NCBI GenBank assembly: GCA_904063045.1
Contig: CAJFCJ010000012.1
Coordinates: 1,116,001-1,180,000, forward strand
Reading direction: 5' to 3'
Source: Dimorphilus gyrociliatus
Lineage: Eukaryota; Animalia; Annelida
DNA length: 64,000 bases
Under the pieces are notes generated by a model, which was not told the DNA's origin, ran no database searches, and was given only the letters and a program-made list of their open reading frames with translations. The first letter of the stretch is position 1; each line of letters starts with the position of its first letter. The translations under genes were made by a program, and so were the position numbers. This document shows positions 25,101 through 31,665 of this stretch, piece after piece.

Positions 25101-25209
25101 TAACTTATAGACGTATCAGCGTGACCTTCACCTTCACCAGCAAAGTTTAGAGAATAATACTGCGTGCTACTACTATATTCGTAAAATCTGAGGCCTTAAT
25201 TCATTCAAA

Positions 25210-26927
25210 ATGGAGGATAGTGGTAGAAAAAAATGCGCGCCAAAGGTCAGTGTACTTCTTTGTGGTTTTAAAATATGAGATGACACATAATTAATACCGT
25301 AGGTCCAACTGCATATTCACCTTGATGGATCGGTCCGAGTTCAAACTGTAATCGATCTCGCCCTCGAGTATGATATTCCTCTACCTACATATGACGTTGA
25401 TAAATTGAAATCTTTATTAGAAAGTTACACTGGAAGCTTGACAAAATTTTTAGAAGCATTTAAGATATTTGCTCCTGTGTATACAGGCAAACTGAAAGCA
25501 TTAAGAAGAATTGCGCTTGAATTTGTTGAAGACTGCGAAAATTGCGGTCTTTGGTATTGTGAAGTACGATATTGTCCATTTCTCCTGACAGGTGATTCTT
25601 TAAGTGTATATGAAGTTATGGACACGATTGAGAATGCTTTAAAAGAAGGGTCTGAAAAATATAATGTAAAAATAAAATCGATCTTGAGTATAATGCTCCA
25701 TCTACCGGACACTGCCATGAAAACAGTTGAAATAGCAAAATCGTACGAAAACGTTGTAGGTATTGATATAGCAGGTGATGAAAATACCGTCCCAAAAACG
25801 GGCTATGATGCTCGTTTCAGAAAAGCATTTGAGGAAGCTAAGAACTTGAACATTAGTAGGACAGTTCACGCCGGAGAAAACGGTCCGCCTTGGCATGTCG
25901 AGTTTGCCATCAGAGATTTAGACGCCCAAAGAATAGGGCATGGCTACGCAACCGTTAAAGATGAAAATGTGATAAAATTATGTCAACAAAAACACATTCA
26001 TTTGGAAACATGCCCACTGAGTTCACGGGCAACGGGATCTGTAAGTGGGGATTGGAAGAATCATCCTTTGAAGAAAATTGTTAAATTAGGAATTTCATTC
26101 TCAGTTAATTCAGATGACACGATTATGACAGGTAAAGATGTTAGGGGAGATTTCCGAGTATGCTTGGATAAGATCGGTTTAACAAGACAAGATCTTATTT
26201 CGTCGGTTAGTTAACTATTTTATTAGATAAGGTATAATTACTAAGAGAAAGCTAGACAATATTTTGCAACATCACATCGCAAGGTCTGTCATTAGCACAC
26301 CGCTAACCCAATTGAGTTTTGAAGATGGTAAACTTTACAAATGACGATTTGTTAATTAAATCCCATCAACAGATGGAGCGCATCGATTTTCTATTGTAAT
26401 CGTAACAGAGTAAACTTTAAATAGGCCACCCAAGTTAAATATTTTCTCAGTCTATTTCCCTTTAACAGAACTAATCAATTAGTTCGAATTATTGCTGATT
26501 ATGCTTTTTATTTTCCATTTTACAATTATTAGTTTAGTTATTGTATACAATTATTCATACAAATTGCACCAAAGGTGTAACTTTTTACTTAAGATATATC
26601 ACTTCTTTACAAAAAATAATCTCAACTTTACAGATAGAAATAATGTATTTATTCTCTAATGGCAATCTTTTATTTATATCTTTCTATTCTATTTTTTTCT
26701 TCCCTAAATAGAATTTTTACGGGGCCAGTGCTTCTTTTCAGTCAGAAAAGGACAAAAAGAAATTATTGGAAAGGCTGAAAAGATGGTTTGGTAACGAGAC
26801 GCCTAAACAATACAAACAACCTGCAAGTTGGAATATTTTGTCTAAAAGTTCTCGCCGTTTGACTCCTTTAATTCTAGTTTCCTTTCTTTGCTTTATATCT
26901 GGAGTTATTGTGTGTTTTGTTGTCTGA
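25210..26927 (+). CDS. ADA: adenosine deaminase (ADA1-type) with C-terminal hydrophobic tail
   Basis: Exons 25210-25245, 25303-26205 and 26712-26927 (384 aa). Zn/catalytic motifs LHIHLDGS, DIAGDE, VHAGE, RIGHGY, ETCPLSS and NSDD are intact. The last exon NFYGASASFQSEKDKKKLLERL matches the ADA final helix, followed by LTPLILVSFLCFISGVIVCFVV-stop. Confidence 0.92.
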
Positions 26928-27190
26928 GAGAATATTTTCTTTATCTTGTCAACTGAGAAGCAATACCTGCATAAACTACCCGTTTTTTTTCTCTTCCACA
27001 AACTGTTTTGCAATACATGTTTAACAATATTTTATATGTAATAATAAATAAGCATGTTAACTCACATAGGACAAAGGAAAAACCGTGCAGTGTTTTGAAT
27101 ATTTAAAAACAATTAAAAACAGAGATTTATTAAGAATGAAATTGAATTTGTTTATTATTTAATAAACTTTCTGCTTGAATTTCTTACAAT

Positions 27191-27541
27191 ATGCTTAACG
27201 TTGTTATCAAAACGATACTATTTCTAAGTTATCTTACTATATTTACATTATCGATTAAAATTCCCAACTCTACAGAAGAAACGAAAGTGAAAGAACGAAC
27301 AGTCATAACAGAGGATGATTTCTCTAGTCCGAATGCGTATCATTGGATTGCTCTAATTATTCCGTTGACTATTACACTTTTGGTAGGCCTATCGGCTTTC
27401 TATTCCATCTGTCTTATGTTAAATTGTTTCGAGTTTTCAACAAGTCGGAGTACAAAATCAAAGGAACAGTTAACAATGAAAAATTTCACGCATAGGATGA
27501 CAAGAGGGGAATTAGTTTCACATTACGCACCAAATGACTAA
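27191..27541 (+). CDS. small single-pass membrane protein, 116 aa
   Basis: N-terminal signal-like segment, short polar ectodomain with an NST sequon, hydrophobic helix WIALIIPLTITLLVGLSAFYSICLML, basic tail. Confidence 0.6.
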   Translation: MLNVVIKTILFLSYLTIFTLSIKIPNSTEETKVKERTVITEDDFSSPNAYHWIALIIPLTITLLVGLSAFYSICLMLNCFEFSTSRSTKSKEQLTMKNFTHRMTRGELVSHYAPND

Positions 27542-29876: not shown

Positions 29877-31665
29877 ATGGAAACGAAAATGGGTCGGGCT
29901 TTCTTTGGTGTTTTATTCTTTGTATTTATTATAAAAGTATTCGCGACCTCCAAACCTTTTGATGAGGAGAAATTAGATAAAATAATCGAAAAAGTAATGG
30001 CGTGTAGAAAGAACGTTGCATTCAATTTGGCTATCGTAGAGAGAGAGCATATTATTCTTACTAAAGGTTATGGTATTTCCAATTTAGAAAAGAATAAAAC
30101 GATGACTGCTAATACACAAATAGGTAATTAAACAAAAAACTGATTATACATTCCAACTAGTTTTTCCTTCGTTACTAAATCATTAAATAAATGTACTTTG
30201 AACAGGTATAGCATCTTTAACAAAAGCCTTTACGACTCTCTTACTCTCAGATATTCTTAGACAGTCAAAGTTCACTTGGGGTACACCAATTAAGCAGATT
30301 TTGAAAGAAAAATTTAGTCTCTCAGACTGGTTCAGAACAGAACAAGTTACATTGAGAGATTTAGCAGCCCATAAAGTTGGTATTCAACCCGATAATATGG
30401 CACGATTAAATCCAAGACTAAATAGGAAGAGTGTAGTTAAATTTCTTCGATTTTTAAAACCCATAAGGGAATATAGAAACAGTTTCTATTATAACAACAT
30501 ATTGTATGGATTTTTATCAAGGTTGACTGAAGTTGTTGACGGAGATGAAAAAACTTGGGAAAGACTTATGGAAGATCAAATTTTTACTCCCTTAAATATG
30601 ACAAACACAACATTTGGGCATACCACAAATTTAAATGATTCAAATATGGCTCTTCCTTATCTAAATTATAATGGCAAATTAAGGAAGGTAGACCCTTTTA
30701 TTACGAAACGTTTTAGTTCTATTGGTGGCTCTGGATCTATCATGAGCACGGCGAATGATATGGCAAAGTGGCTTTCCTACTTATTAAATCCTAGTCGATT
30801 TCCAGGAGCGCCATTCAATAAAAGTTTGACTGAAACGTTTGAAGAATCAAACGTTATAAAAGAAACTTCAAGTTCTAAATTATATAGGCGTCCACTTTCT
30901 CCTGTAACTTATTCATTTCATGAATATGGTCTAGGTTGGAGGACTGGATTTTATAGAGGTTATAAACAAATCCTACACACAGGAACGTCCTGGGGATATG
31001 GAGCGCTTTTAACGTTAATCCCAGATCAATCTATTGGAATTTATACAGGCGTTACAAATCCTGAATCTGGTTATCATGGCCGTCGCGCTGTTCATATGTA
31101 TATAATGGATCAATTGCTGGGAAAAGAGTCGTTTTTAAACGAGAGTAACATCTGCTCTTTTCCAGTTCCTTACAAACGTCCAAATAAGTACAAGACAATG
31201 CAAAGTTTCCCAACTGCTTTCTCTTCTTCAGACACTGAGGGAACATATGGTAATTTTGCTTATGGTAATCTAACGATAAAGTCGTCAAATAACCAATTAA
31301 TATTGATCTATGGTGATGCTCAAGCAAATATAACTGAAGGCTATTGGAAGTTAAAAACAACTTCTGGTTCAACGAACCTTAAACTTAATATGGCTGGAGA
31401 GGGTGAAAAAGCCCTATGGCCAATAGTCATGCGTTTGACATTAAAACGATCAAGAGCATCTGAAAAATTTCAAAATATAGTAGTTAGTTCCTTCGATAGA
31501 AATAATCCGCCAGTATTCATAAGAGACTTGAAATTTCAAGATGCTCCACCACCCCCAACCTGCCCTTGTTCTCCGACATCTTCGATAAGTGACTCACTTC
31601 ACCCATTTTCCATCTTAACACTACTCTTCAGTGGCCTTTTGATAAATTACTACACTTTAATTTAA
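29877..31665 (+). CDS. secreted, probably GPI-anchored beta-lactamase-fold serine hydrolase (class C / D-aminopeptidase-like)
   Basis: Signal peptide; single intron 30124-30205. SxxK motif (IASLTKAF), LRDLAAHKVG, YxN motif (FYYNNILY) and HTG triad (LHTGTSWGY). C-terminal Ser-rich site followed by a hydrophobic tail. Confidence 0.88.

What the first reader, a model, noticed from the sequence alone, without database searches (positions are those of the whole stretch)
25210..26927. Adenosine deaminase with a C-terminal membrane anchor
Seen: a complete ADA1-type catalytic set. The last exon continues past the normal final helix into NETPKQYKQPASWNILSKSSRR, then 22 hydrophobic residues (LTPLILVSFLCFISGVIVCFVV) ending at the stop. 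No signal peptide follows the ATG, and there is an in-frame TGA at 25189. Established: ADA1-type enzymes are soluble cytosolic proteins, whereas ADA2/ADGF enzymes are secreted via signal peptides. Inference: a tail-anchored ADA facing the cytosol on ER, mitochondrial or peroxisomal membranes. Alternatively, if an unseen upstream exon supplies a signal peptide, a GPI-anchored ecto-ADA. Either would localise adenosine clearance to a membrane.
Basis: partly seen in the sequence, partly recalled or inferred. Interest (0 to 1): 0.72.

Follow-up and report, generated by a model that had tools for sequence, protein, structure and literature searches.

The report
Adenosine deaminase with conserved membrane tail
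The tiny marine worm Dimorphilus gyrociliatus makes an ordinary-looking adenosine deaminase whose real, spliced last exon (missing from the public annotation) adds a strongly hydrophobic tail, kept in related worms, which most likely pins this normally soluble enzyme to the cytosolic face of an internal membrane.

Summary
The window is Dimorphilus gyrociliatus. The gene has three exons (25210-25245, 25303-26205, 26712-26927) and encodes 384 aa.

- **Enzyme type:** exon 2 is an ADA1-type adenosine deaminase (PF00962 6e-69, TIGR01430 above its cut-off) with all zinc and catalytic residues.
- **Annotation:** the public model (DgyrCDS8802, 315 aa) stops at a TAA inside retained intron 2, so it lacks exon 3.
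- **Splicing:** RNA-derived contigs from two studies carry the 26205/26712 GT..AG junction.
- **Exon 3:** it supplies the conserved last ADA helix, a 23-aa linker and a 22-aa hydrophobic segment (GRAVY 2.7-3.0) that ends at the stop.
- **Conservation:** a relative at saturated synonymous divergence (dS 1.5) keeps the same exon layout, frame, stop position and a hydrophobic end. A ~95% relative does too.
- **Chance:** about 2e-4 per species.
- **N-terminus:** no signal peptide, a conserved in-frame TGA 21 nt upstream of the ATG, and no trans-splicing reported for this species. A GPI anchor is therefore very unlikely.

Best reading: a tail-anchored ADA1 facing the cytosol, probably inserted in the ER. 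Localisation is untested.

Among 260 other ADA relatives, only one marine-protist cluster has a C-terminal membrane segment. No paper found describes an intrinsically membrane-anchored ADA1. I class this as a new variant of a known enzyme, of moderate interest.

The parts
25189..25191 (+). In-frame TGA 21 nt upstream of the start codon, inside a 5' UTR stretch of about 40 nt that is identical in the relative L001
25210..25245 (+). Exon 1: MEDSGRKKCAPK. A hydrophilic, ADA1-like short N-terminus with no signal peptide
   Evidence: It is 11/12 identical in L001. It is also the start of the annotated protein P0001.
25246..25302 (+). Intron 1, 57 nt, GT..AG
   Evidence: The junction is in X1 RNA contig record 1, with 26 nt on the exon 1 side.
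25303..26205 (+). Exon 2: 301 aa, the ADA1 TIM-barrel core. It holds HxH (25312-25320), G170 (25774-25776), HAGE (25867-25878), GHG His (25939-25941) and SDD (26113-26118).
   Evidence: Pfam PF00962 6.1e-69. TIGR01430 233.5 bits against a cut-off of 216.55. PDB ADA1 2e-47. Residue coordinates.
26206..26711 (+). Intron 2, 506 nt, GT..AG, long for this genome (median 66 nt). It is partly retained in RNA. The public annotation reads 9 nt into it (VS + TAA, ending at 26214).
   Evidence: PMC7854359
26325..26500 (.). Conserved non-coding block inside intron 2, about 90% identical to the relative against 80% for exon 2. Probably an intronic cis-regulatory element.
   Evidence: No Rfam match. No fold signal. 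Not repeated in the window.
26712..26789 (+). Exon 3, first 26 codons: the conserved last ADA helix region, NFYGASASFQSEKDKKKLLERLKRWF
   Evidence: It aligns to residues 352-377 of ADA homolog P0006, directly after the end of the exon 2 match. It is 22/26 identical in L001. AF2 predicts a helix at 9-27.
26790..26858 (+). Linker, 23 aa, GNETPKQYKQPASWNILSKSSRR. Polar, ends in RR, fast-evolving.
   Evidence: omega about 0.76; low pLDDT, no secondary structure at 28-39
26859..26924 (+). Predicted transmembrane tail anchor LTPLILVSFLCFISGVIVCFVV, 22 aa, with no residue after it
   Evidence: GRAVY 2.67 over 22 aa and 3.02 over 19 aa. AF2 helix with pLDDT 83-95. The relative has ASIFFLSIAVIFSGVIISLV+N, GRAVY 2.56.
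26925..26927 (+). Stop codon TGA
26928..27095 (+). 3' UTR as far as the spliced X5 contig reaches. AATAAA at 27043.

Best explanation
This is the ADA1-type adenosine deaminase gene of Dimorphilus gyrociliatus. Its true product is a 384-aa protein: a complete, catalytically intact ADA barrel, a flexible polar linker of about 23 aa, and a single very hydrophobic 19-22-aa helix that ends at the C-terminus. The hydrophobic helix leaves the ribosome only at termination and there is no signal peptide. The protein should therefore be inserted post-translationally as a tail-anchored protein, with the enzyme in the cytosol tethered to a membrane. The high hydrophobicity of the helix and the absence of any charged residue after it point to the ER, through the GET/TRC40 route, rather than to mitochondria or peroxisomes. 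The effect would be that adenosine and deoxyadenosine deamination in this worm takes place on a membrane surface rather than throughout the cytosol. Shown here: enzyme family and catalytic residues, exon structure, splicing into mRNA, conservation of the tail, lack of a signal peptide. Inferred: membrane insertion, topology, ER as the target, and any physiological consequence.
For: - **Family:** PF00962 6e-69. TIGR01430 equivalog is above its cut-off. The best solved relatives are mouse, human and bovine ADA1 at 2e-47, against ADA2 at 2.5e-8 and ADAL at 8e-7, with all catalytic residues aligned.
- **Splice:** the GT..AG junction 26205/26712 is in the X1 metatranscriptome contig (153/271 nt flanks, no indel in the CDS) and in the X5 contig (depth 526, against 96 for the unspliced branch).
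- **Continuity:** the start of exon 3 continues the homology exactly where exon 2 stops.
- **Conservation:** relative L001 has the same three exons, its exon 3 stays open to within one codon of the same end, and it has a hydrophobic end of GRAVY 2.56. This holds despite dS 1.54 in exon 2. The ~95% relative in X1 shows only conservative changes in the helix, I->M and V->I.
- **Chance:** 1.8e-4 per species.
- **No other hydrophobic segment or signal peptide:**
- **No trans-splicing in this species:** PMC7854359.
- **ER rule:** a hydrophobic TMD with low or no tail charge goes to the ER, and deleting the tail of a model TA protein sends it to the ER (PMC5450235).
- **Parallel case:** a marine-protist ADA cluster, P0195/P0262, also ends in a TMD.
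Against: - No localisation, membrane-extraction or topology data exist.
- The X5 junction contig has only 29 nt on its short side. The exon 1 junction contig has only 26 nt, and no read shows the true 5' end.
- All run data were contigs, so isoform ratios are rough and an intron-retaining transcript is also present.
- The tail sequence evolves fast (linker+TMD omega about 0.4). T-rich sequence readily encodes hydrophobic residues.
- The targeting rules come from mammalian and yeast proteins, not annelids.
- No dedicated TM, TA or GPI predictor was available. Hydropathy was computed by script.
Confidence: 0.68

Rival explanations
1. The protein is tail-anchored but sits on the mitochondrial outer membrane or on peroxisomes rather than the ER. 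Alternatively it moves on from the ER to another compartment such as the plasma membrane, still facing the cytosol.
For: TA proteins are shared out among these organelles by subtle features, and the published classifier misplaces 21-33% of known cases (PMC5450235). Two arginines sit just before the helix. The protist ADA with a C-terminal TMD carries a strongly basic KKYKK tail, the non-ER signature.
Against: The helix has GRAVY 2.7-3.0 with nothing after it (the relative has only N), so tail charge is zero or negative. High hydrophobicity with low or no tail charge is the ER signature, and tail deletion redirected a model protein to the ER.
Confidence: 0.15
2. The hydrophobic end is not a working anchor. 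It is a tolerated C-terminal extension, for example a former 3' UTR read after loss of a stop codon. It would leave the enzyme effectively soluble, or it would act mainly as a quality-control or degradation signal.
For: The tail evolves quickly (dN 0.67, omega about 0.4). T-rich DNA (56% T in the helix codons) gives hydrophobic peptides easily. Most ADA1 relatives lack any such tail.
Against: At dS about 1.5, a neutral stretch would have lost its frame and its hydrophobicity. Instead the frame, the stop position (within 1 codon), the length and GRAVY above 2.5 are kept in three lineages. Chance is about 2e-4 per species. A free 20-aa segment of GRAVY 3 on a cytosolic protein is not expected to stay soluble.
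Confidence: 0.1
3. The main product is the annotated 315-aa protein from the intron-retaining transcript. It would be a soluble ADA lacking the last helix, and the tailed form would be a minor isoform.
For: The public annotation gives this model. An unspliced contig covering 26176-26644 exists in X5. Intron retention rises with intron size in this species (PMC7854359).
Against: The spliced branch has about 5.5 times the depth of the unspliced branch in X5 (a rough measure). The 315-aa form lacks the conserved N-x-x-A-A-x-S-F...L-L-x-x-L helix that all full-length ADA1 relatives carry. The relative's read-through into its intron gives an unrelated peptide, so the intron-encoded end is not conserved.
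Confidence: 0.04
4. GPI-anchored ecto-ADA. An unseen upstream exon supplies a signal peptide, and the C-terminal hydrophobic stretch is a GPI attachment signal that is cleaved off.
For: The shape of the tail (small residues S-K-S-S, a short spacer, then a hydrophobic end) is compatible with a GPI signal. The 5' end of the mRNA was not seen directly.
Against: The ATG, the 12-aa N-terminus and the in-frame TGA at -21 are conserved in the relative. Exon 1 is joined to exon 2 in an RNA contig. The annotation uses the same start. The N-terminus has the normal ADA1 length before the HxH strand. No spliced leaders occur in this species.
Confidence: 0.03

Closest known systems
ADA1 (cytosolic adenosine deaminase of mouse, human and cattle; PDB 1a4l, 3iar, 1krm)
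   Same: Same fold family and same zinc and catalytic residues. Same short N-terminus before the HxH strand and same last helix. About 37-40% identity over the whole barrel.
   Different: Mammalian ADA1 is soluble and reaches membranes only by binding other proteins such as CD26. That is the only sense in which 'membrane-bound ADA' appears in the papers found. The worm enzyme carries its own 45-aa extension ending in a transmembrane-type helix.
Tail-anchored enzymes that belong to otherwise soluble families, such as the FALDH/ALDH3A2 ER and peroxisomal isoforms described in PMC5450235
   Same: A catalytic domain in the cytosol, a single C-terminal TMD, and no signal peptide. Targeting is set by TMD hydrophobicity and tail charge.
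   Different: No adenosine deaminase is among the described tail-anchored proteins in the papers I could search. Here the anchor is on the constitutive last exon rather than on an alternative one. No alternative 3' exon was seen.
ADA2 / ADGF / CECR1 secreted adenosine deaminases (PDB 3lgd; TIGR01431)
   Same: Same superfamily and same reaction. They are another way of placing adenosine deamination outside the bulk cytosol.
   Different: ADA2/ADGF enzymes have a signal peptide and extra N-terminal domains. The worm protein matches them only weakly (2.5e-8 and 2.3e-11, against 2e-47 and 3e-69 for ADA1) and has no signal peptide.
Unnamed marine-protist ADA cluster P0195/P0262 (MMETSP transcript and ENA contig)
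   Same: An ADA with the full catalytic motifs, a long C-terminal extension, and a single TMD close to the C-terminus.
   Different: It is unrelated in tail sequence and only 35% identical in the barrel. Its extension is longer (about 70 aa), its TMD is less hydrophobic (2.15), and a basic KKYKK tail follows the TMD. It is an independent origin and probably goes to a different target membrane.

Membership tests
ADA1-type adenosine deaminase (Pfam PF00962, NCBIfam TIGR01430) | Domain model matched above the curated threshold | tested here: met
   PF00962 233.1 bits against a cut-off of 27. TIGR01430 233.5 bits against a cut-off of 216.55, with exon 2 alone.
ADA1-type adenosine deaminase (Pfam PF00962, NCBIfam TIGR01430) | Zinc ligands (mouse H15, H17, H214, D295) and catalytic or substrate residues (G184, E217, H238, D296) | tested here: met
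   All are aligned and identical in the alignment to 1a4l and 9vlv.
ADA1-type adenosine deaminase (Pfam PF00962, NCBIfam TIGR01430) | Closer to ADA1 than to ADA2/ADGF or ADAL | tested here: met
   ADA1 chains 2e-47 to 1e-44, ADA2 (3lgd) 2.5e-8, ADAL (8qch) 8e-7.
ADA1-type adenosine deaminase (Pfam PF00962, NCBIfam TIGR01430) | Adenosine to inosine deamination activity | not testable with these tools
   Needs an enzyme assay.
Tail-anchored membrane proteins | No N-terminal signal peptide and no other hydrophobic segment | tested here: met
   The N-terminus is MEDSGRKKCAPK. The best 19-aa hydropathy in exons 1+2 is 0.98. The upstream in-frame stop is conserved.
Tail-anchored membrane proteins | A single TMD at the extreme C-terminus, with a very short segment after it | tested here: met
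   The last 22 aa have GRAVY 2.67 (19-aa core 3.02), with 0 residues after them. The relative has a 20-aa TMD of 2.56 plus 1 residue. Hydropathy was computed by script; no dedicated TM predictor was available.
Tail-anchored membrane proteins | The tail-coding sequence is part of the mature mRNA | tested here: met
   Spliced contigs in X1 and X5 run through the TMD codons and the stop.
Tail-anchored membrane proteins | Post-translational, GET/TRC40-type (or other) insertion with the N-terminal domain in the cytosol | not testable with these tools
   Needs insertion and localisation experiments.
GPI-anchored proteins | N-terminal signal peptide for ER entry | tested here: not met
   no trans-splicing.
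GPI-anchored proteins | C-terminal omega site, spacer and hydrophobic signal | tested here: inconclusive
   The tail shape is compatible, but no GPI predictor was available. The point is moot without ER entry.
Prenylated (CaaX) proteins | Cys at position -4 conserved among orthologs | tested here: not met
   The window protein ends CFVV, but the relative ends SLVN with no Cys.

The most novel reading that the evidence does not exclude
Dinophilid annelids have turned their housekeeping ADA1 into an integral, tail-anchored ER-surface enzyme. This would be the first adenosine deaminase known to carry its own membrane anchor. Marine protists have hit on the same design independently. If so, membrane-localised cytosolic adenosine clearance is a recurrent and selectable solution, for example next to nucleoside transporters or to methylation reactions on the ER that release S-adenosylhomocysteine.
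Probability: 0.5. Interest if true: 0.6.

Novelty: new variant of a known kind. Interest (0 to 1): 0.46.

Why it matters
ADA1 is a textbook soluble enzyme. Where it acts on membranes in mammals, it does so by docking to other proteins. An ADA1 with a built-in, conserved tail anchor would show that purine salvage can be fixed to a membrane surface by the enzyme itself. It would also give a simple natural construct (barrel, linker, TMD) for testing what localised adenosine removal does.

On the practical side, the public protein for this gene is truncated, because it stops in a retained 506-nt intron. Database surveys therefore cannot see the tail. The corrected model and the unannotated neighbouring gene are useful for the D. 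gyrociliatus annotation.

The case is limited in scope. It is seen only in Dimorphilus-like worms, plus one unrelated protist cluster, and it has not been tested at the bench.

Tried and rejected
- **Exon 3 as an artefact:** rejected. The junction is in RNA contigs, homology continues without a gap, and a relative has the same layout.
- **Prenylation through the terminal CFVV:** rejected. It is not conserved.
- **Alternative coding exon, or a soluble isoform, encoded in the conserved intron block:** rejected. A 1-nt indel between the species breaks any frame, and the possible frames hit stops within a few codons.
- **Intronic snoRNA or other known RNA:** no Rfam match in the intron. The only hit is a weak snoZ7 match inside exon 2 (E 0.23, below gathering). 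Fold z-scores are -0.84 and -0.16.
- **Tail or intron block as a repeat or transposon:** no other copy in the window.
- **PDB search with exon 3 alone:** only chance hits.
- **Scan of JGI metagenome contigs for more exon 3 relatives:** none confirmed.
- **Literature:** 'tail-anchored' with 'adenosine deaminase', 'C-terminal transmembrane' with ADA1, and 'membrane-bound adenosine deaminase' returned only unrelated co-mentions or CD26-bound mammalian ADA.
- **Earlier scan notes on this genome:** none concern this gene.
- **Bugula neritina ADA (P0032):** its 484-aa model has a hydrophobic low-complexity end that looks like read-through of non-coding sequence. I did not count it as a tail anchor.
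- No whole-protein fold or search of the 384-aa product was made.

Full report
**What is there**

The window is from the annelid Dimorphilus gyrociliatus. Exon 2 of the gene is 100% identical to the public protein DgyrCDS8802 (P0001), encoded on contig CAJFCJ010000012.1 of GCA_904063045.1. The DNA is about 30% G+C.

Reading the sequence and translating by reference gives three exons:

- Exon 1, 25210-25245: MEDSGRKKCAPK.
- A 57-nt GT..AG intron.
- Exon 2, 25303-26205: 301 aa beginning VQLHIHLDG.
- A 506-nt GT..AG intron.
- Exon 3, 26712-26927: 71 aa plus TGA.

So does the in-frame TGA at 25189. The full product would be 384 aa.

All searches were made exon by exon, by reference. The whole-protein fold and predictor step is left out.

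**What the enzyme is**

- Exon 2 matches Pfam A_deaminase at 6e-69.
- It exceeds the NCBIfam equivalog cut-off for adenosine deaminase on its own: TIGR01430, 233.5 bits against 216.55.
- Its best solved relatives are mammalian ADA1 (2e-47 to 1e-44). ADA2/CECR1 (2.5e-8) and ADAL (8e-7) are far behind.
- The zinc ligands and catalytic residues of mouse ADA (H15, H17, G184, H214, E217, H238, D295, D296) are all aligned and identical.

**The public model is truncated**

P0001 is exon 1 plus exon 2 plus 'VS'. It ends at the TAA at 26212-26214 inside intron 2. It therefore lacks the last helix that every full-length ADA1 relative carries.

The first 26 residues of exon 3 align to exactly that helix (residues 352-377 of homolog P0006, E 2e-4). 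They start at the residue after the one where the exon 2 alignment ends.

**Is exon 3 used?**

All four runs that could be laid were contig sets, so they show presence rather than levels.

- **X1.** In this marine metatranscriptome, a 424-nt contig from a ~95% relative joins 26052-26204 to 26711-26981. It has 153 and 271 nt on the two sides and no indel before the stop.
- **X5.** This run is 100% identical to the window. A 414-nt contig (depth 526) joins 26176-26204 to 26711-27095, and a sister contig (depth 96) runs unspliced from 26176 to 26644. The 29-nt side is just under the tool's 31-nt bridging rule, so on its own it is supporting evidence only. It is what a k-mer graph branch at the donor site looks like.
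- **Exon 1-exon 2 junction.** It is in an X1 contig with 26 nt on the exon 1 side.
- **Intron retention.** The genome paper reports a median intron of 66 nt and retention that rises with intron size (PMC7854359). That explains both the unspliced contig and the truncated annotation.

**Conservation**

Exon 1 is 11/12 identical and exon 2 is 85% identical.

Its exon 3 reads NFYAASSSFQSETDKKDLLERLKRWFGNDVPEKFDKTFWNRFTANTCQTASIFFLSIAVIFSGVIISLVN*. It has the same helix, a diverged polar linker with one codon less, a 20-aa hydrophobic segment (GRAVY 2.56), one residue and then the stop.

- Synonymous divergence in exon 2 is saturated (dS 1.54, omega 0.066).
- The linker plus hydrophobic segment has omega of about 0.41, yet keeps frame, length and hydrophobicity.
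- The substitutions listed for the X1 relative in exon 3 are four synonymous, four in the linker, and I->M and V->I in the hydrophobic segment.
- As a chance control, 5.6% of random frames in this window stay open for 40-60 codons, and 0.33% of those end in a 19-aa stretch as hydrophobic as the relative's. The joint chance is 1.8e-4.
- The downstream gene is syntenic.

**Topology argument**

- The best 19-aa hydropathy in exons 1+2 is 0.98. In the tail it is 3.02.
- The N-terminus is short and charged, and has the usual ADA1 length before the HxH strand.
- About 40 nt before the ATG, including the in-frame TGA, are identical in the relative.
- The species has no spliced leaders.

With no route into the ER lumen, a GPI anchor is very unlikely. 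A C-terminal helix that ends at the stop codon can only be inserted after translation. That is the definition of a tail-anchored protein.

AF2 on exon 3 alone gives a helix at 9-27, an unstructured stretch at 28-39, and a confident helix through the hydrophobic segment (pLDDT 83-95). This was a single-sequence prediction of a fragment, so it is illustrative only.

In mammalian cells, a hydrophobic TMD with low tail charge goes to the ER through TRC40/GET3, and removing the tail of a model TA protein sends it to the ER (PMC5450235). Here GRAVY is 2.7-3.0 with no tail. I therefore rank ER first, and mitochondria or peroxisomes second. This step is inference from rules established in other organisms.

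**How unusual it is**

- Among the 119 other nearest homologs, none has a hydrophobic C-terminus apart from a Bugula model that looks like read-through.
- An exhaustive HMMER scan of 1.84 billion representatives gave 150 best relatives.
- Across all 260 other sequences in hand, the median best C-terminal 19-aa hydropathy is 0.22.
- Only one cluster exceeds 1.8. It is a marine-protist ADA (P0195 from MMETSP, P0262 from ENA) with full catalytic motifs, a roughly 70-aa extension, a TMD of 2.15 and a KKYKK end. It is an independent case.
- One other relative (P0141) has an N-terminal signal-like segment.
- The paper searches found no intrinsically membrane-anchored ADA1. 'Membrane-bound ADA' means CD26-bound ADA.

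**Verdict**

The feature is a lineage-restricted new variant of a very well-known enzyme.

It is backed by splicing evidence and by conservation, but not by any localisation experiment. I could not establish whether the worm also has a soluble ADA1, what the relative species is, or where the mRNA starts.

Noticed in passing
window 26325-26500 (inside ADA intron 2): A block of about 175 nt is about 90% identical to L001:1678-1855, while exon 2 is 80% identical and the rest of the intron 50-65%. Parts of it also lie in contigs of two other runs: X3 'organism A' covers 26388-26562 at 93%, and X1 covers 26416-26633 at 97%. It has a 1-nt indel, so it is non-coding. It has no Rfam match and no significant RNA fold. 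It is probably one of the intronic regulatory elements that the genome paper links to unusually long introns.
   Followed up: partly
window 27191-27541 (+): An intron-less ORF of 116 aa looks like a small single-pass membrane protein: a hydrophobic N-terminus and a central TMD (IALIIPLTITLLVGLSAF). It is 62% identical to an ORF at the syntenic place in the relative (L001:2865-3254) and is covered by an X5 contig. No gene is listed between the ADA gene and the beta-lactamase-like gene in the gene table returned for the NCBI contig.
   Followed up: partly
window 29877-31665 (+): A beta-lactamase-fold (PF00144) gene has a first exon that looks like a signal peptide. Its last ORF ends in a hydrophobic stretch (...HPFSILTLLFSGLLINYYTLI*). 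That is a GPI-signal-like end on a secreted esterase or penicillin-binding-type protein.
   Followed up: no
P0195 / P0262 (MMETSP transcript and ENA contig; not in the window): A marine-protist adenosine deaminase has intact catalytic motifs and a C-terminal extension of about 70 aa. It ends in a transmembrane segment plus KKYKK. It is an independent, apparently undescribed, membrane-tailed ADA with a basic tail, which is the non-ER signature.
   Followed up: partly
P0141 / L005:938-2110 (Logan ERR12379728): An ADA1-type protein in an intron-less gene of an unnamed eukaryote starts with a hydrophobic signal-like segment (MISIYSVTIFFVSTVIFVVLS) directly before the HxH strand. It is a possible secreted or N-terminally anchored ADA1.
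   Followed up: no
window 25170-25209 and L001:511-550: The 40 nt upstream of the ADA start codon are identical between the two species, although synonymous sites are saturated. This is a conserved 5' UTR or core-promoter element.
   Followed up: no
window 26212-26214: The public annotation DgyrCDS8802 ends at this TAA inside the retained intron 2, so the deposited protein (315 aa) is C-terminally truncated by 69 residues net.
   Followed up: yes
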